Positions 1,974-7,876 of a stretch of DNA of 64,000 nucleotides are shown piece after piece (within the stretch, counting starts at the first letter, position 1; the number at the start of each line of letters is the position of its first letter). Location: positions 164,598 through 228,597 of IMG/VR virus record IMGVR_UViG_3300015262_000001, one strand, 5' to 3'. Made by a program: the position numbers and the translations under genes. The notes under the pieces were generated by a model. The model was not told the DNA's origin. It saw only the letters and a program-made list of their open reading frames with translations, and searched no databases.

Positions 1974-3107
1974 TTACGCCAGGCCAAACAAACCGGCCGG
2001 TACGTGATGTACAGGTGCAGGCAGTGCTTCAACTGGAGCCTGGTCAGAAGCACCCAGGGATACCAGGTTGCTGCCAGGCATCACACTGCGACCCAGAGCA
2101 GAACCGCCAGCGCCGAGTGCCAGACCAACCATGCCGCCAACAACGTAACGACCGAATTGACCATCGACGTACTGGTCAACTTGCTCACCGGCGAAGAACG
2201 CGCCGATGCCGCCGACCACAGTGCCGATTGCCGAACCAGCAGTCAGACCGCCACGAGCCATCATTTCCATGCCGCCACCGACCACGGCGCTACCGGCTGC
2301 GATCCAGCTGGTACGGATGCCTTCGTCACGTTCACCCATCAGGCTGAAGCGCGACTTGTCGGAGTAATGACCGTCATCTTTAGGCTGGTTCACTGCACAC
2401 CAGCGCATGAAACCGTGTACAGCTTGGCTGCCTTCTTCGTCACCCAGGCCTTCACTGAAGGTCACGAAGTTCTCGTCGAAGCCCTTGGACTGATCAGCGG
2501 TCAGCGAGAACGCGTCCCACTTGGCAGTCAGTTCAGGAGCAGTGGAGAGGAAAGCAACCCAGGCAGTGGCGCGCTGCTCTGGGGTGGTACGGCCGACGGC
2601 GATCATGGCGATTTCGAAACCGGCGATGGCTTTTTGCAGATCAGCAGCTTTGGTAGTTTGTGCGTTCATGGTGTTGGTGTCCTGTTCGTTTGCGTTAAAG
2701 GAGGTTTGACCGTTGTGGTCTGGGGCAGTGGTGGTCGAATTATTGACCGGTTGTTGATGAACGTGTTCGCCAGCCAAATCCTTCTCGATGAAGGTTGCTT
2801 CATTTGGCTGGCCTGCAACGGCGACCTGGGCGGTACCAGACAGTTCAGTAACCCTGACTGGAGCTGGCTCAGGATTGAATTCACCGGCCTTCTTGATATG
2901 GTTGAAGGACCAGTTAACTCCGAGCTGGTTATTCACCATTTGCAGCACAGGTTGACGATCCCGAGTAGCTACCTGGGATTGGTCCACCATCACCGTTTTA
3001 ACATAGGCCAGTTGAACGGCCTCCGGTGCACCTTCAGTACGAAGTTTGGAAACTACCGCCACCAGCATGGAAGCGATGTTTGCAACTTGGTCGTTCTTGG
3101 TGTTCAT
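1974..3107 (-). CDS. early protein with C-terminal glycine-zipper membrane segments (377 aa)
   Basis: C-terminal third holds GxxxG-rich hydrophobic helices (AVVGGG; AIGTVVGGIGAFFAG; VVGGMVGLALGAGG); SD AGGAGAG. Confidence 0.8.
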   Translation of the reverse strand: MNTKNDQVANIASMLVAVVSKLRTEGAPEAVQLAYVKTVMVDQSQVATRDRQPVLQMVNNQLGVNWSFNHIKKAGEFNPEPAPVRVTELSGTAQVAVAGQPNEATFIEKDLAGEHVHQQPVNNSTTTAPDHNGQTSFNANEQDTNTMNAQTTKAADLQKAIAGFEIAMIAVGRTTPEQRATAWVAFLSTAPELTAKWDAFSLTADQSKGFDENFVTFSEGLGDEEGSQAVHGFMRWCAVNQPKDDGHYSDKSRFSLMGERDEGIRTSWIAAGSAVVGGGMEMMARGGLTAGSAIGTVVGGIGAFFAGEQVDQYVDGQFGRYVVGGMVGLALGAGGSALGRSVMPGSNLVSLGASDQAPVEALPAPVHHVPAGLFGLA

Positions 3108-3167
3108 AGCGGTACTCTCCTACAAGTAAGGTTAGATTACTCGTCATGGCGAATAATCTTTATTGAA

Positions 3168-3211
3168 TAATCACACAAGTAATATAGACACAAAAACATC
3201 TGTATCTTAAA
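3168..3211 (-). promoter_or_regulatory. extended early promoter TTTAAGATACAG-N10-GTCTATATTACTTG
   Basis: Contains TATATTAC; 37 of 44 nt identical to 41605-41648. Confidence 0.75.
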
Positions 3212-3219
3212 TTTACTTG

Positions 3220-3360
3220 TTACTGTTTAGTGGCGCTCATAATGCCCCGAGTAATGTACTGGGCGCTAGTACCTCCATCAGAAGGTTCCATGTAAGCCAC
3301 TGTCATACAGCAGGACGCAATAACGCTAAACAGGCCCACCAGTACTAAGGTAGCTTTCAT
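3220..3360 (-). CDS. small membrane/secreted peptide (46 aa)
   Basis: AGGAGA SD; MKATLVLVGLFSVIASCCMTVAYM... has a hydrophobic N-terminus; manually translated. Confidence 0.6.
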   Translation of the reverse strand: MKATLVLVGLFSVIASCCMTVAYMEPSDGGTSAQYITRGIMSATKQ

Positions 3361-3454
3361 TTTGTTTCTCCTGAAAGAAGTATGTTGTTTATACACACGG
3401 ATGATGTAGTCTTGAAATAAGCTGTAAGTTAAAATGCAAAAAATAAAGGTACTC

Positions 3455-3487
3455 TACTCCTACTCCCCGATAAAGGGAGTAGGAGTA
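3455..3487 (-). terminator. intrinsic terminator
   Basis: 13-bp stem TACTCCTACTCCC/GGGAGTAGGAGTA with a T-rich tail on the minus strand, just after the 3496 stop. Confidence 0.75.
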
Positions 3488-3495
3488 GTACCAGG

Positions 3496-3942
3496 TTACT
3501 TCTTCGGTTTCTTAATGCCGTACTGCTCGTTGTTGAAGATCAGCGTGCGTCCAGCCCAATCTGCGAACAGGTTGTTCAGAGCAAGGATCTCATACTTGTC
3601 GAAGTCATACTTCACCGACATATGGAACAAAGGTGTACCGTAAGCGTGCTGATACCCCTCATCCTTCAAACGGCGAAACTCTTCCAACATGTCAGTGCTG
3701 GTCAGCATGAACACCAGACCGTCACCCAAAGTTTTCAGGGCAATGATATTCGCCGTGAACTCCTTGGATGCAGGCATCAGGTTACACAACGGCGTAGGAA
3801 TATCACGCTCGTCGAACACCATGGTAGCATGCAGTTCGTGTTTTGATTCTGGAGAAATACCTGCCAGCACCAACTTCGAAATGATTTCTTCCTGCATCTC
3901 TGACTTGAGTTGCACACTGACGTAACTATAGTCCAATTCCAT
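3496..3942 (-). CDS. acb1: 2H phosphodiesterase, Acb1 / T4 gp57B-like anti-CBASS nuclease
   Basis: Two HxT/S motifs (HAT, HMS) about 70 aa apart. The layout YV..L / HATMVF / LVFMLTS / GYQHAY..FHMSVKY parallels T4 gp57B as I recall it (HSTICY / LVLVLDS / GATHDF..PHITLSY). Length 148 aa. Confidence 0.7.
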   Translation of the reverse strand: MELDYSYVSVQLKSEMQEEIISKLVLAGISPESKHELHATMVFDERDIPTPLCNLMPASKEFTANIIALKTLGDGLVFMLTSTDMLEEFRRLKDEGYQHAYGTPLFHMSVKYDFDKYEILALNNLFADWAGRTLIFNNEQYGIKKPKK

Positions 3943-3947
3943 TACGG

Positions 3948-4127
3948 TTAGTCCTGGATACGTTTGACTTCCACACGCACCAGGGTGTTACCCGATTTAA
4001 TGCGTGCCCTCAAACGATGGCAGGCGGCCTCCTGAAGGTCAAAAGCCTCCATGGTAGTATAAGGGGTACCGTAACCGCAGCTGTTGCCTTCAACGTAGAA
4101 CAGGTACTTGCTTTCCATGAGAGTCAT
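3948..4127 (-). CDS. small hypothetical protein (59 aa)
   Basis: Manually translated MTLMESKYLFYVEGNSCGYG...; fills the gap exactly, 3 nt and 5 nt from its neighbours. Confidence 0.65.
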   Translation of the reverse strand: MTLMESKYLFYVEGNSCGYGTPYTTMEAFDLQEAACHRLRARIKSGNTLVRVEVKRIQD

Positions 4128-4130
4128 CTC

Positions 4131-4418
4131 TTAATTCATTAAAGGGCGGACGAAGAATTCTTCCAGCTCTTTACCTTCAGCAAAAGGAACGTCATCACTC
4201 TCGGCTACAGACGCGCGAATGATAAACCCGTTACGCACTTCAATGCGCAGTTTGGTAAGTTCTGGCTTACCGCTATCACGGCAGACATAAACCAACGGAC
4301 CACCCATGACTCCCAGGATGTTTTCCAGGGCACGAGTATCAACCTTATCCGCTACGTCCTTGCCGATCTCTTTGTAGCGCCATACGTTTGCATGGCGAAA
4401 GAATTTGACTGCCCGCAT
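4131..4418 (-). CDS. hypothetical protein (95 aa)
   Basis: ATG immediately follows the DHH stop (translational coupling). Confidence 0.7.
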   Translation of the reverse strand: MRAVKFFRHANVWRYKEIGKDVADKVDTRALENILGVMGGPLVYVCRDSGKPELTKLRIEVRNGFIIRASVAESDDVPFAEGKELEEFFVRPLMN

Positions 4419-5342
4419 TTACTTCTTCCCTAGTAATAGTTTCCACGCCATAACCGGATGCATTGCGAAAGCCATGATTTTGTCATACAGTGAATAGTCA
4501 AGCACCTCATGGCTGCGAGCGAAGCGTTTGTCGTTGTAACTGATCGTGAAACCGGCGGCATCTGAATGCCCGCCACCACCAAAGTATTCAGCGATTGCAG
4601 ATACGTCAATACGGCCCTTCTGACAACGGATGGAATACTTACGGCCTTTAGGCAAATCCATGTAGACCAGTGCGAACGGATAATCCTTGGAAAGAACATC
4701 ACCCAGGTCAGACGCAAAGAATATGTTGGCGTTGACCACAGGTACTTCGTAGCCCAAGCATTTCATCGTGCGAGCGTTCATTGACACACGCGTGGTGTCC
4801 TGCTCGTGCTTACGTAACAGAATGCGCCCCTCAGCAATCAGGTCCAGCGGATCGGTATTGATCAACGCATCAAACTGTTCAACGTTAAACGGGTAGGAAA
4901 AGGCCGCGGTTACCCAATTGTTGGTATTCGGGTATTTGAACTTCCACAGATCGCGGTCTTCAACATACAACAACCCTTCTGGCGGAGGAGAGCTATTGAA
5001 GTACTTCCAGGCCAGCATGGCACCCGAATGGCTCTCGTCTACAACAAAGAGCCCTTCGAGATTTTTCTTTGCAGTGGCGTGATGATCCAGAACAACTACG
5101 TCATGCGCACGCTTCAGCATTTCCACCATGACTTCACGTGGATAACTAAAGTCCACCACGTAAACCATCTTGCCGTCTACGTCAGGCAGCTTGTTGTTGT
5201 AAGCAGCGGCCACCAACTCGATGTCGATACCGAGTCGCTTGAAGTGGCGCCATACCACCCATGCAGCGCCAACACCATCCAGACAGTCTTTGTGATAGAT
5301 GCACAAGACTGGTTTCATTTCCATATCCGTACTTGATTCCAT
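4419..5342 (-). CDS. DHH/DHHA1 phosphoesterase (NrnA-like)
   Basis: Motifs YHKDCLDG, VVDFS, VLDHH, EDRDLW and C-terminal GGGHSDAAGF. Confidence 0.9.
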   Translation of the reverse strand: MESSTDMEMKPVLCIYHKDCLDGVGAAWVVWRHFKRLGIDIELVAAAYNNKLPDVDGKMVYVVDFSYPREVMVEMLKRAHDVVVLDHHATAKKNLEGLFVVDESHSGAMLAWKYFNSSPPPEGLLYVEDRDLWKFKYPNTNNWVTAAFSYPFNVEQFDALINTDPLDLIAEGRILLRKHEQDTTRVSMNARTMKCLGYEVPVVNANIFFASDLGDVLSKDYPFALVYMDLPKGRKYSIRCQKGRIDVSAIAEYFGGGGHSDAAGFTISYNDKRFARSHEVLDYSLYDKIMAFAMHPVMAWKLLLGKK

Positions 5343-5365
5343 TACCCCAGGCCCCCTAACGATTG

Positions 5366-5656
5366 TTATGCGCGTTTGATTTGGTATTTTTGGAAGAGCT
5401 TTTGGGCACTGCCATCGGCAATAGCCTCATCGACAGCAAGATCGAGAGCCAGATCGTAAAGTGCTTCCTGTGTCAACGGAGGAGGAGCCGGCACTCGCTT
5501 TGTCACAATGATGCGTTGAATGCAACGGGAGAAACGATGCTCGGCAACTTGCATCATGCTGTCGTGATTACCACGACCGATAGTACATGAACGGAAGTGT
5601 GTTACGATCCCGTTAAGGAAAACAACATACTTAAACGCACATTTAGAGACAGTCAT
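5366..5656 (-). CDS. hypothetical protein (96 aa)
   Basis: ATGA overlap with the upstream gene. Confidence 0.65.
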   Translation of the reverse strand: MTVSKCAFKYVVFLNGIVTHFRSCTIGRGNHDSMMQVAEHRFSRCIQRIIVTKRVPAPPPLTQEALYDLALDLAVDEAIADGSAQKLFQKYQIKRA

Positions 5657-5889
5657 TGCGTTACCCCCTCTTCTTCTTCGTGAAGTTGCGCCATGTATTC
5701 TTGATAGCTGTCTTCGGCACGGTGGTTGACGTCAGTCGTTTCCACGTTGTCCTGGTGCTCTTTAGACTGCTCGCAAGTATCACAGACCATGACGGGATAG
5801 TCACCCAGTTCTGGGATCTGGTAGGGGATAAACTCCGTCCCCGCATTATCTTCCATTACGCATTTACAAATGTAGCATTCGTTGCTCAT
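5653..5889 (-). CDS. small Cys4 zinc-ribbon protein
   Basis: CYIC...CDTC pairs and an acidic tail; start moved to MSNEC at 5889. Confidence 0.65.
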   Translation of the reverse strand: MSNECYICKCVMEDNAGTEFIPYQIPELGDYPVMVCDTCEQSKEHQDNVETTDVNHRAEDSYQEYMAQLHEEEEGVTQ

Positions 5890-5893
5890 TTGA

Positions 5894-6376
5894 TTACCCC
5901 AAGAAACCTTCATCGGTTTCAGTTGGATTGTTAGCAGCGGCTACAGCCAGCTTGTCCGCCAGTTCGTTATCAGGAACACCGGTATGACCCCGTACCCAAA
6001 AGAATTTAACCTTGTTGGCTTTAAGCAACGGCTGAATACGCTGCCAGAGGTCTTTGTTCTTAATAGGTTCCTGGGTCTTCCAGGCGATCCAGTTACTGCG
6101 GGCCCAGCCATTCAACCACTTGGTTGCAGAGTTGATCACGTACATGGAGTCGGTGGTAACTTCAAAGACCGTACCGGGCTTGCCAAACTCCTCCAGTGCA
6201 ACGATGACCGCCAGCAACTCCATGCGATTATTGGTGGTTCGGAAAAAGCCTTTCGAGAGTGTGACAACCTCGTCTCCGCATCTCGCTACAATCCCGTAAC
6301 CTCCAGGGCCTGGGTTACCCAGAGCACTGCCGTCCGTGTGCACCTTGTAGGTAATAGGGGGTTCTTTTTTGCTCAT
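5894..6376 (-). CDS. rnhA: ribonuclease HI
   Basis: TDGSALGNPGPGGYG, TTNNRMEL, TDSMYV, KNKDLW, WVRGH and NELADKLA motifs. Confidence 0.97.
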   Translation of the reverse strand: MSKKEPPITYKVHTDGSALGNPGPGGYGIVARCGDEVVTLSKGFFRTTNNRMELLAVIVALEEFGKPGTVFEVTTDSMYVINSATKWLNGWARSNWIAWKTQEPIKNKDLWQRIQPLLKANKVKFFWVRGHTGVPDNELADKLAVAAANNPTETDEGFLG

Positions 6377-6388
6377 GGCATTCTCTTT

Positions 6389-6419
6389 AAATCCACCCCA
6401 GGGTAAGTGGGGTGGATTA
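6389..6419 (-). terminator. hairpin / probable terminator
   Basis: AATCCACCCC...GGGGTGGATT inverted repeat in the intergenic gap. Confidence 0.6.
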
Positions 6420-6430
6420 CTAGCTAAGGG

Positions 6431-7876
6431 TTAGAAAGGACGCGGGTAGTACGGGTAGTCCACGTCCCCATTATCTTCCCGGTAAGCTTCACCGGTAACA
6501 ACACGAGCGGTACGGATGGCACTGTCCAGCATCTTGATCACACGCAGACGCGAACGGATCGACTGCACTACATAATGGATCAAGTTAGCAACCACTGGGT
6601 CCTTCATGTCCGGATCGAGCGGGTTGTGATAACTGGAGTCACGCAGTACTTCGCGCACCTTGGCATCAATCACATCCATAGGCGCATCGATTTCCAGATC
6701 AACCGGTACGCGGTAACCGATGGTAATACCGACCTTCGTAACAGTTTCACGGCGCATGGACAGATGATCATGCGGCAGGTCAACTTTCAGCGTGCAGAAC
6801 TTGTTGGGGATGTACAACGACTTGTCGCCCAACGATTCGTCCTTCATGGTGGTATTCACGATGAGGACAGACCCGGTCGAAGGAATGTAGGTCTTTTCCA
6901 GTTGCGCAAACTTCAGACGTGCACGATGACCCTTGATGGTAACTTCCTTCAACCGCGAGTTGGTCGCAGCGAAGCCTTCGTTGGTTTTGATATTGCTGTC
7001 GTCGATCGTGGTATCCAGCAACTGGATAGAATCACTGATCACGCTATTGAACACCGACGAACGGCTGAGCGACGAGTACTTCAGTTCGCGACGAGGTTCT
7101 TCGCGGTTATGTTGTACCAGCCAAGGCGATTTGTACCGCTCTTCTTGACGAGGCATCGAACTGACTGTCGAACTGTTGAACACGCAGCTGTTGGTCGACT
7201 GGTTTTCCAGAATCACTTCACCCAGGAAGGTATCGTGGGTACTGTCGGTGTTGATCAGGATCGCCTGGTTTACCAAATGACGGTTGATATCCATCGCCTG
7301 GTAGCCGCCACGATAGATGTCGAAGCTATTGATCTGCACAGATGACTTCTCATCGAGGAGCAACTGCACAGTAATGCCGTCCGACTCGACCACGAAATGC
7401 GAGAAGGTACGTGGTACGTCTTTCTCACGCCAGGCCATACGGGTGTTCAGCCAGAAGGTATGACCGCTGTCGGTGGTAATACGACCGGCTTCCTTGATGT
7501 CTACCTGGCGCGGTTCAATCATTACACCCTTGACCATCACCCAAGGAGTTTTCAGAGCGGCCAGCTCTTCCTTGGAGTAATACTTGAGCTCAGCCGCGCC
7601 CCATGGAGTGAACGTAGAAGACTTCTTGGGAAGGTCCATCTTGATGCGACCGATCGCTTCTTCAACGGTTTCCGAGTGCGGCTTGGCACCACGTGGTTTT
7701 GCATGATTGGACATCGGCAATAACTTTACCGATTTAGGCTGATCAACAGAAACTGCTTTATCTTGAGCGGTAACTGCTTCAAGCGCTTTAACCGCTTTGG
7801 CCACTTGTTTGGTTTCAGTTGCTGGTGCCGCTTTGTGATCGTTTGCATTTGCTTTCTTTTCAGTTACGGTGGTCAT
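6431..7876 (-). CDS. hypothetical protein (481 aa) with possible beta-helical repeat region
   Basis: Low-complexity Ala/Lys N-terminus; Ser/Thr/Asn-rich short beta repeats in the middle. Confidence 0.8.
   Translation of the reverse strand: MTTVTEKKANANDHKAAPATETKQVAKAVKALEAVTAQDKAVSVDQPKSVKLLPMSNHAKPRGAKPHSETVEEAIGRIKMDLPKKSSTFTPWGAAELKYYSKEELAALKTPWVMVKGVMIEPRQVDIKEAGRITTDSGHTFWLNTRMAWREKDVPRTFSHFVVESDGITVQLLLDEKSSVQINSFDIYRGGYQAMDINRHLVNQAILINTDSTHDTFLGEVILENQSTNSCVFNSSTVSSMPRQEERYKSPWLVQHNREEPRRELKYSSLSRSSVFNSVISDSIQLLDTTIDDSNIKTNEGFAATNSRLKEVTIKGHRARLKFAQLEKTYIPSTGSVLIVNTTMKDESLGDKSLYIPNKFCTLKVDLPHDHLSMRRETVTKVGITIGYRVPVDLEIDAPMDVIDAKVREVLRDSSYHNPLDPDMKDPVVANLIHYVVQSIRSRLRVIKMLDSAIRTARVVTGEAYREDNGDVDYPYYPRPF

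What the first reader, a model, noticed from the sequence alone, without database searches (positions are those of the whole stretch)
3220..5342. Acb1-like 2H phosphodiesterase clustered with a DHH phosphoesterase: candidate nucleotide-signal counter-defence module
Seen: a 148-aa protein with HAT and HMS motifs sits in one tightly packed minus-strand operon with a DHH/DHHA1 enzyme and two small unknown ORFs, ending at a terminator at 3455-3487. Established: T4 Acb1 (gp57B) is a 2H enzyme that cleaves CBASS cyclic di- and trinucleotides. DHH/DHHA1 (NrnA/Pde2-type) enzymes hydrolyse pAp, linear dinucleotides and some cyclic dinucleotides. The phage nucleus shields DNA from nucleases but not from signalling or RNA-targeting immunity. 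Inference: the two enzymes may act in sequence (ring opening, then degradation) or on different signals, and the 59-aa and 95-aa ORFs between them are candidate anti-defence proteins.
Basis: partly seen in the sequence, partly recalled or inferred. Interest (0 to 1): 0.68.

Follow-up and report, generated by a model that had tools for sequence, protein, structure and literature searches.

The report
Phage Acb1-like enzyme beside DHH phosphoesterase
A soil jumbo phage related to Pseudomonas phage EL carries a divergent, untested relative of the anti-CBASS enzyme Acb1 close to a DHH phosphoesterase, but the two genes lie together because one phage lineage inherited them that way, not because they are shown to work as a pair.

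Summary
On the minus strand, a 148-aa 2H protein (3496-3942, motifs H38-A-T40 and H107-M-S109), 59-aa and 95-aa ORFs, and a 307-aa DHH/DHHA1 enzyme (4419-5342) are tightly packed and end at a strong terminator hairpin (3448-3492). The unit probably starts further upstream, at RNase H (5894-6376). The genome is a 228.6-kb rhizosphere virus that encodes chimallin; its nearest cultured relative is phage EL.

The 2H protein belongs to the Acb1 family (Pfam PF23474, just above its cut-off; phrog_755, which also holds T4 Acb1; best fold matches are phage Acb1-type enzymes). It lacks the Trp lid and one stacking Trp, and no member of its subfamily has been assayed.

The "module" reading is weak. DHH and 2H co-occur only in the EL-like lineage. 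The 2H-linked DHHs form a single clade. Three related loci keep the 2H gene without a DHH nearby. Seventy other viral DHH loci have no 2H gene nearby. In several other lineages this DHH family sits next to thymidine kinase, dCMP deaminase and thymidylate synthase, which points to nucleotide salvage. Counter-nucleotide roles for jumbo-phage 2H and DHH enzymes were already predicted in 2021. Verdict: a new member of a known kind, of moderate interest.

The parts
3496..3942 (-). 148-aa 2H phosphodiesterase, a divergent member of the Acb1 family (PF23474 / phrog_755). Catalytic motifs are H38-A-T40 and H107-M-S109. The C-terminus is Lys-rich (KKPKK) where Acb1 has its Trp lid.
3948..4127 (-). 59-aa ORF of unknown function. 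It is a real gene: the C-terminal half is conserved in relatives, and its position within the RNase H-to-2H interval varies.
   Evidence: no Pfam or PHROG hit
4131..4418 (-). 95-aa ORF of unknown function. It is 81-89% identical to its homologues in the four closest relatives and 31% to a more distant one. In other relatives it lies upstream of DHH, or is present where no DHH was found nearby.
   Evidence: AF2 pLDDT 69 with no PDB match; atlas search uninformative
4419..5342 (-). 307-aa stand-alone DHH/DHHA1 phosphoesterase of the NrnA/TmPDE type (phrog_4771). Invariant residues: D64, D86-H87-H88, D129, D131, R239, GGGGH 255-259.
5366..5656 (-). 96-aa ORF of unknown function, in the same packed gene run
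5653..5913 (-). 86-aa ORF with CxxC...CxxC spacing (zinc-ribbon-like), phrog_8344
5894..6376 (-). RNase H (PF00075, E 1e-40). It is probably the first gene of the unit and is the conserved upstream anchor of the interval in related chimalliviruses.
6390..6418 (-). 11-bp hairpin between the 481-aa ORF and RNase H (dG -18.9, z -3.1). A similar hairpin lies at the same place in phage EL.
3438..3492 (-). Intrinsic terminator: roughly 19-bp stem (3448-3492) followed by a T-run (3438-3447)

Best explanation
The locus is the end of a replication-linked gene run (NAD-dependent DNA ligase, a 481-aa ORF, a hairpin, RNase H, small ORFs, DHH, small ORFs, 2H, terminator) in a rhizosphere nucleus-forming phage related to Pseudomonas phage EL. 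The stretch between RNase H and the 2H gene is a variable island in this group of phages. The 2H protein is a divergent, lid-less member of the Acb1 family. It most likely acts as a metal-independent phosphodiesterase: the two His-x-Thr/Ser motifs drive attack of a ribose 2'-OH on the adjacent 3'-5' phosphodiester through a 2',3'-cyclic phosphate. Its most probable target is a cyclic or short-oligonucleotide immune signal in the host cytoplasm. That target is inferred, not shown. The DHH/DHHA1 protein is an NrnA-type two-metal phosphoesterase acquired once by the EL-like lineage. It most likely breaks down short oligonucleotides or pAp into mononucleotides for nucleotide recycling, and it acts independently of the 2H enzyme. 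The DHH-2H neighbourhood is inherited gene order, not a demonstrated two-step pathway. The roles of o59 and o95 remain open.

For: Accessory status. phiKZ and 201phi2-1 lack this 2H family. A 26%-identical homologue, CBB_118, was detected in phage CBB virions (PMC5259590). In CBB and EJP2 the gene lies between NAD+-salvage genes and Sir2/Nudix genes. No RNA ligase or RtcB gene was found in the genome.

DHH. The catalytic residues are invariant, and the best PDB relatives are of the NrnA, TmPDE, GdpP and Rv2837c types.

The pairing has a single origin. Only 10 of 80 IMG/VR DHH loci have a 2H gene within up to 10 kb, and all ten share the ligase-RNase H...2H gene order. The twelve 2H-linked DHHs form one clade with SH-aLRT 100. 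Eleven of 14 chimallivirus-type 2H loci have a DHH, while L109, L114 and RisingSun do not.

DHH in salvage contexts. dCMP deaminase lies just downstream of DHH in 16 loci from 3 DHH clades, thymidine kinase lies just upstream in 13 loci, and thymidylate synthase is nearby in 8. Phage Noxifer has dCTP deaminase and thymidylate synthase nearby, RTH11 has dTMP kinase, and phiCbK has a dNMP phosphatase and RNase H.
Against: The Pfam score is marginal, and sequence matches to solved Acb1 structures are weak (E 0.05-0.7). Acb1 W74 is Leu here, and the C-terminal Trp lid is absent. Doherty et al. 2025 found that two of the viral 2H structural groups they assayed cleave none of 18 messengers, and relatives of this protein in their list (pTD1 gp030, EJP2_129) were not assayed. 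So the enzyme may not cleave immune signals at all. The gene keeps a fixed position next to replication genes, which is unusual for counter-defence genes. For DHH, the salvage context comes from other lineages, not this one. The DHH gene abuts o95 and has stayed near the 2H gene in most EL-like genomes, so a functional link is not excluded. DHH enzymes that degrade immune or second messengers do exist (MAD on cA4; NrN in type III CRISPR loci).
Confidence: 0.5

Rival explanations
1. DHH and 2H form a counter-defence module. The 2H enzyme opens cyclic oligonucleotide signals, leaving linear products with a 3'-phosphate, and the DHH enzyme (a nanoRNase / pAp-phosphatase type) degrades those products, or the two enzymes take different signals. 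o59 and o95 are further anti-defence factors.
For: The genes are tightly packed in one unit. The pair is retained across EL-like genomes whose proteins have diverged to about 40-50% identity. Acb1 products are 3'-phosphorylated linear dinucleotides, and NrnA-type enzymes act on pAp and short oligonucleotides (molecule names). Both enzyme classes were predicted to be counter-nucleotide enzymes in jumbo phages (PMC7824862).
Against: The linkage arose once. Three related loci have the 2H gene with no DHH in the fetched flanks, and RisingSun, Vibrio 2 TSL-2019, Miami, EJP2 and CBB have no DHH in the whole genome. PCH45, Noxifer and VaK have a DHH but no 2H gene. Seventy of 80 viral DHH loci have no 2H gene nearby. 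In other lineages the DHH family sits next to dNTP-salvage genes. Opening the ring already inactivates the signal (inference), so a second step has no obvious selective need. o59 and o95 also occur where no DHH was found nearby, and they change position.
Confidence: 0.15
2. The 2H protein is not an immune-signal nuclease. It is a 2',3'-cyclic phosphodiesterase acting on RNA ends, 2',3'-cNMPs or ADP-ribose 1'',2''-cyclic phosphate, serving RNA end-healing or NAD-linked metabolism.
Against: The best sequence-family and fold matches are the compact phage Acb1-type enzymes, not LigT or CPDase. No RNA ligase (PF09414, PF09511) or RtcB was found in the genome, although the PF09511 search had no positive control. 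The NAD-salvage context is absent in this genome's locus.
Confidence: 0.22
3. The DHH enzyme is itself a signal-degrading enzyme, such as a ring nuclease or a cyclic-dinucleotide or SAM-AMP phosphodiesterase, and acts independently of the 2H enzyme.
For: Precedents exist. GdpP and Rv2837c appear among the PDB relatives. [quoted passage not shown] The DHH nuclease NrN is encoded in CorA type III CRISPR loci (PMC10600005).
Against: The family's recurrent neighbours are thymidine kinase, dCMP deaminase and thymidylate synthase, plus dTMP kinase, dCTP deaminase and a dNMP phosphatase. I found no phage DHH with a demonstrated anti-defence role in the searched literature.
Confidence: 0.13

Closest known systems
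Acb1 (T4 gene 57B; Erwinia phage FBB1 Acb1, PDB 7T26/7T27), Hobbs et al. 2022
   Same: Compact 2H fold of about 150 aa. The two His-x-Thr/Ser motifs align. The Y12 and F107 equivalents are aromatic. Same Pfam family (PF23474) and same PHROG (755).
   Different: Only about 18% identity to T4 Acb1. W74 is replaced by Leu. The C-terminal lid with W147 is missing and a KKPKK tail takes its place. The Pfam score is barely above the cut-off. No activity data exist.
2H PDE-9 of Burkholderia phage BCSR5 (PDB 9Q2G/9Q2Y), structural group 3 of Doherty et al. 2025
   Different: PDE-9 has an N-terminal lid of about 15 residues that this protein lacks. Identity is 17-18%. The listed relatives were not purified, so the structural group and substrates of this clade are unknown.
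NrnA / TmPDE (TM1595) / Rv2837c / GdpP catalytic domain (stand-alone DHH-DHHA1 phosphodiesterases)
   Same: Two-domain DHH plus DHHA1 architecture of about 310 aa, with the DHH triad, motif II and IV aspartates, the GGGH motif and the conserved Arg of DHHA1.
   Different: Motif I is a variant (H17..C20.D22 rather than the usual H-x4-D-x-D; my reading of the alignment). Similarity to PDB entries is confined mainly to DHHA1. The phage family phrog_4771 has no characterised member that I could find.
Counter-nucleotide phosphodiesterases predicted in jumbo phages (Iyer, Anantharaman, Krishnan, Burroughs, Aravind 2021, PMC7824862)
   Same: That paper predicted both DHH and 2H enzymes of jumbo phages as tools against nucleotide signals or cyclic phosphates.
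   Different: It treated them as separate families in different phage groups and did not describe the EL-lineage adjacency. The predictions were not tested.
LigT / plant and yeast CPDase 2H enzymes
   Same: 2H fold and catalytic tetrad.

Membership tests
Acb1 (PF23474 / phrog_755) | Profile match above the curated cut-off | tested here: met
   Pfam 28.2 bits against a cut-off of 27 (marginal; 27.5 in the six-frame search). phrog_755 gives E 7.5e-16, and T4 57B scores 228 bits in the same PHROG.
Acb1 (PF23474 / phrog_755) | Compact 2H phosphoesterase fold | tested here: met
Acb1 (PF23474 / phrog_755) | HxT/HxT catalytic tetrad (H44, T46, H113, T115) | tested here: met
   H38-A-T40 and H107-M-S109 (Ser in place of the second Thr). 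The two His and S109 are invariant and T40 is present in 15 of 16 close homologues; both motifs align with the T4 and BCSR5 motifs.
Acb1 (PF23474 / phrog_755) | Base-stacking residues Y12, W74 and F107 | tested here: inconclusive
   Y7 and Y101 align with Y12 and F107, but W74 aligns with L72. This rests on a sequence alignment at about 18% identity.
Acb1 (PF23474 / phrog_755) | C-terminal lid (residues 145-152) with W147, and E141 contacting adenine | tested here: not met
   The protein ends at the position aligned with W147, with a KKPKK tail. The EL homologue is shorter still. Lids do vary in this family; PDE-9 has an N-terminal one.
Acb1 (PF23474 / phrog_755) | Cleavage of 3'3'-cGAMP, cUA or cAAA, and rescue of the phage from CBASS | not testable with these tools
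   No biochemical or genetic data exist for this clade. Its relatives in Doherty et al. 2025 Table S1 were not purified.
DHH/DHHA1 phosphoesterase, NrnA type (PF01368 + PF02272, phrog_4771) | Both domains above the Pfam cut-offs | tested here: met
   DHH 30.6 against 28.1. DHHA1 27.2 against 25.9. phrog_4771 E 1.2e-86.
DHH/DHHA1 phosphoesterase, NrnA type (PF01368 + PF02272, phrog_4771) | Metal-binding and catalytic motifs (DHH triad, motif II and IV Asp, GGGH) | tested here: met
   D64, D86-H87-H88, D129, D131 and G255-H259 are invariant in 12 sequences. Motif I is a variant.
DHH/DHHA1 phosphoesterase, NrnA type (PF01368 + PF02272, phrog_4771) | Substrate (pAp, nanoRNA, or cyclic dinucleotide) | not testable with these tools
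   There is only indirect context: neighbours are dNTP-salvage genes in other lineages.
Two-gene functional module (DHH + 2H) | Repeated, independent co-occurrence across lineages | tested here: not met
   The 2H-linked DHHs form one clade. A 2H gene is near the DHH in 10 of 80 DHH loci, all sharing the same gene order. A DHH is near the 2H gene in 11 of 14 chimallivirus-type loci and in 0 of 8 distant loci. No DHH occurs in 5 other 2H-bearing phage genomes, and no 2H in 3 other DHH-bearing phage genomes.
RNA repair system (2H CPDase with an RNA ligase) | A partner RNA ligase or RtcB encoded by the phage | tested here: not met
   PF09414, PF09511 and PF01139 were not found in the 228.6-kb genome. 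The PF09511 search had no positive control.

The most novel reading that the evidence does not exclude
EL-like nucleus-forming phages carry a two-step system that erases nucleotide signals. A lid-less Acb1-type enzyme, possibly delivered in the virion as in phage CBB, opens cyclic oligonucleotide alarm signals in the cytoplasm. The co-transcribed DHH nanoRNase / 3'-phosphatase then removes the 3'-phosphorylated linear products. o95 and o59, which usually occur together in the same island, act as further counter-defence factors.
Probability: 0.12. Interest if true: 0.65.

Novelty: new member of a known kind. Interest (0 to 1): 0.35.

Why it matters
A 2026 review states that Tad1 is so far the only anti-defence protein described in jumbo phages (PMC13282480). 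The phage nucleus does not protect against signalling-based immunity. A working Acb1-type enzyme in EL-like chimalliviruses would therefore be a useful second example, and it can be tested directly with the cultured phage EL (gp126, and gp125 for DHH) in Pseudomonas aeruginosa. This lid-less subfamily could also add to what is known about how the 2H core sets substrate choice. The analysis also corrects two likely misreadings. First, the 'RNA ligase' label on these genes is a legacy PHROG name that T4 Acb1 carries too. Second, the DHH neighbour is better explained by nucleotide salvage than by defence. Neither enzyme family nor the counter-nucleotide idea is new.

Tried and rejected
- Megablast of 3000-6500 against cultured phages found nothing, so relatives had to be found at the protein level.
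- phmmer and profile searches of the 2H protein against PDB sequences gave only weak Acb1 hits (E 0.05-0.7).
- hhalign against the single T4 sequence gave a negligible probability (0.9%) but did align both His motifs. I treat it as uninformative.
- The word search found only 16 close homologues.
- o95: no Pfam, PHROG or NCBIfam family. The atlas hits are at chance level. The AF2 model has pLDDT 69 and no PDB match at E <= 0.001. I did not fold o59.
- I tested whether DHH generally partners RNase H and rejected the idea. RNase H is near DHH only in the ten EL-type loci among the 80 IMG/VR DHH loci, plus the cultured phage phiCbK.
- A protein search with phiKZ chimallin missed the genome's own chimallin; the PHROG profile found it.
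- The search for related loci with the broad 2H alignment failed because it has no conserved stretch; a narrower alignment worked.
- The contexts of the eight distant 2H loci were uninformative.
- RisingSun's 'structural protein' label for its homologue is not backed by that phage's mass-spectrometry table, which does not mention gp120.
- No run on record as RNA holds this sequence, so expression could not be checked.
Full report
**Observation.** The gaps between them are 5, 3 and 0 nt. Just after the stop codon of the 148-aa gene lies a stem of about 19 bp (3448-3492) followed by a T-run (3438-3447). It folds at -31.7 kcal/mol with z -6.3, and none of 200 shuffles folds as well. The consensus scanner missed it. 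The packed gene run does not start at DHH. It continues upstream through a 96-aa ORF, an 86-aa CxxC...CxxC ORF and RNase H (5894-6376; PF00075, E 1e-40) to an 11-bp hairpin at 6390-6418. Beyond that lie a 481-aa ORF and an NAD-dependent DNA ligase. The small ORF at 3220-3360 lies after the terminator and is a separate unit.

**The genome.** The window is the last 64 kb of a 228,597-bp IMG/VR virus record with direct terminal repeats. The same DNA occurs in rhizosphere metagenomes, and no listed run is on record as RNA. The genome encodes chimallin (phrog_4795, E 3.7e-117), so it is a nucleus-forming-type phage. It has no near-identical cultured relative. At the protein level the closest cultured phages are the Pseudomonas phage EL group, at 47% identity for 2H and 41% for DHH.

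**The 2H protein.**
- It passes the Pfam Acb1 model only just (28.2 against 27 bits) and matches phrog_755 at E 7.5e-16.
- T4 gene 57B, the founding Acb1, scores 228 bits in the same PHROG. PHROG labels this family 'RNA ligase', which explains that label on many homologues.
- In sixteen homologues (50-100% identity) H38, H107, S109 and H99 are invariant, T40 is present in 15 of 16, and all but the most divergent keep a Lys-rich C-terminal tail.
- Alignment with T4 Acb1 through intermediate jumbo-phage homologues places H38xT40 on H44xT46, H107xS109 on H113xT115, Y7 on Y12 and Y101 on F107. W74 corresponds to Leu72, and the protein stops where the lid residue W147 would be (the residue roles come from Hobbs et al. 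2022).

So the protein is a member of the Acb1 family, but a lid-less and divergent one.

**What the literature adds.**
- Doherty et al. 2025 (bioRxiv 10.1101/2025.08.21.671373) found 75 phage 2H PDEs by structure search and sorted viral 2H PDEs into structural groups. Substrate range followed the core structure. Groups 1 and 6 cleaved none of 18 messengers.
- Their Table S1 lists two relatives of this protein, Vibrio phage pTD1 gp030 and Escherichia phage EJP2_129. These are my hits H33 and H16, at 28-29% identity. Neither was purified. Activity in this clade is therefore untested.
- Iyer et al. 2021 (PMC7824862) had already predicted that DHH and 2H phosphoesterases of jumbo phages counter nucleotide signals or cyclic phosphates.
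- A 2026 review states that Tad1 is so far the only anti-defence protein described in jumbo phages.

**The DHH protein.** Both Pfam domains pass their cut-offs, and phrog_4771 matches at E 1e-86. In twelve sequences D64, D86-H87-H88, D129, D131, R239 and GGGGH 255-259 are invariant. Motif I is a variant, H17..C20.D22. A profile search of PDB sequences finds stand-alone DHH-DHHA1 enzymes: 9r7o, SH1221, TmPDE, NrnA, GdpP and Rv2837c. The enzyme looks active and is of the NrnA type.

**Is the pair a module?** Within the EL-like lineage the gene order is stable: ligase, the 481-aa ORF, RNase H, small ORFs, DHH, small ORFs, 2H, a 377-aa membrane protein. Outside that lineage the link disappears.
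- RisingSun, Vibrio phage 2 TSL-2019 and Miami keep RNase H and the 2H gene but have no DHH anywhere in their genomes. EJP2 and CBB also have the 2H gene without a DHH. EL served as the positive control.
- PCH45, Noxifer and VaK have a DHH but no phrog_755 gene.
- phiKZ and 201phi2-1 lack the 2H family, so it is an accessory gene among chimalliviruses.
- IMG/VR holds 203 DHH relatives. Of the best 80 loci, only ten have a 2H gene within up to 10 kb, and all ten show the EL-type gene order.
- In a quick maximum-likelihood tree (the careful search did not finish), the twelve 2H-linked DHHs form one clade with SH-aLRT 100. Their nearest neighbours come from small viral contigs and include the 53-kb Vibrio phage VaK. 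This fits a single acquisition.
- Among 22 IMG/VR 2H loci, 14 have RNase H upstream, and 11 of those 14 have a DHH in between. L109, L114 and RisingSun do not, even though L109's 2H protein is closer to the window's (53% identity) than EL's is.

The co-occurrence is therefore explained by descent and gives no independent evidence that the two enzymes work together.

**What DHH associates with elsewhere.** I clustered the neighbours of the 80 DHH loci. The most frequent neighbour is dCMP deaminase, just downstream of DHH in 16 loci from three DHH clades. Thymidine kinase lies just upstream in 13 loci, and thymidylate synthase is nearby in 8. In cultured phages, Noxifer has dCTP deaminase and thymidylate synthase nearby, RTH11 has dTMP kinase, and phiCbK has a dNMP phosphatase and RNase H. 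Other contexts are uninformative. This favours a role in turning oligonucleotides or pAp into mononucleotides. RNase H as a general partner of DHH was not confirmed.

**What the 2H gene associates with elsewhere.** In CBB and EJP2 it lies between NMNAT/NAMPT genes and Sir2/Nudix genes. CBB_118, the CBB homologue, was detected in virions with 7 peptides and 60% coverage (PMC5259590). These observations fit either counter-defence or NAD-linked cyclic-phosphate chemistry. No RNA ligase or RtcB gene was found in the genome, which weakens an RNA-repair role.

**The small ORFs.** o95 and o59 are real, conserved genes, but they have no family, fold or atlas match. They usually occur together. Their order and position within the RNase H-to-2H interval vary. 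They are absent from EL, from RisingSun and from two further EL-type contigs (fetched as L007/L033 and L116/L035). L109 has both and L114 has o95, although no DHH was found near either. The interval behaves as a variable island.

**Conclusion.** The Acb1-like and DHH assignments hold at the family level. The two-enzyme module is not supported. The most likely picture has three parts.
- The 2H enzyme is an untested, lid-less Acb1-family phosphodiesterase, probably aimed at an oligonucleotide signal. A role as a 2',3'-cyclic phosphodiesterase is the main rival.
- The DHH enzyme is an independently acting nanoRNase of the NrnA type, acquired once by the EL-like lineage.
- The two small ORFs are accessory genes of unknown function.

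This is a new member of known kinds. It can be tested in the cultured phage EL.

Noticed in passing
window 3220-3360 (-): The small ORF after the terminator probably starts at the ATG at 3360, downstream of an AGGAG. That gives 46 aa with an N-terminal hydrophobic stretch ending in I-A-S-C, which resembles a lipobox, so it may be a small lipoprotein. It is conserved in four close relatives.
   Followed up: partly
window 1974-3107 (-): A 377-aa protein with a Gly-rich, membrane-like C-terminal region. It is conserved downstream of the 2H gene throughout the EL-like lineage (EL gp127). No family was assigned.
   Followed up: partly
L014 4989-5435 (Pectobacterium phage CBB gp118): This distant homologue of the 2H protein (26% identity) was found in purified CBB virions by mass spectrometry (7 peptides, 60% coverage; PMC5259590). 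A 2H phosphodiesterase may therefore be delivered with the virion.
   Followed up: partly
L014 and L015 (phages CBB and EJP2): In these jumbo phages the 2H homologue lies between NAD+-salvage genes (NMNAT, NAMPT) and Sir2 and Nudix genes. This hints at a link to NAD- or ADP-ribose-derived cyclic phosphates, or to a counter-defence island.
   Followed up: no
L067-L097 (IMG/VR DHH loci), e.g. L071 9354-9947 and L081 10857-11348: In other viral lineages the same DHH family is flanked directly by thymidine kinase and dCMP deaminase, with thymidylate synthase nearby. This gene group does not appear in the annotations or papers I consulted.
   Followed up: partly
L012 3953-4411 (T4 57B) and many RefSeq phage records: T4 Acb1 and its homologues are annotated as 'RNA ligase' in RefSeq records, following the phrog_755 label. 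Some EL-like records call the DHH gene 'methyltransferase'. Both labels look wrong.
   Followed up: partly
window 6390-6418 (-); L001 about 1920-1950: A stable hairpin sits between the 481-aa ORF and RNase H, both here and in phage EL. It has only a short U-tract, so it may be a weak terminator or a processing site that marks the start of the RNase H-to-2H unit.
   Followed up: partly
L109 7184-7728, L009 4761-5308, L110 5082-6170, L112 2743-5066: Homologues of o95 and o59 usually occur together but in either order, upstream or downstream of DHH. L109 has both although no DHH was found nearby. They may work as a pair independently of DHH.
   Followed up: partly
L001 2491-3744 (EL gp125): As annotated, the EL DHH protein has about 110-120 extra N-terminal residues that are absent from the window's protein. 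This is either a fused extra domain or a start codon placed too far upstream.
   Followed up: no
window 5653-5913 (-): This 86-aa ORF has two CxxC pairs (zinc-ribbon-like) and matches phrog_8344 (E 3e-6). It is present in only some close relatives.
   Followed up: no
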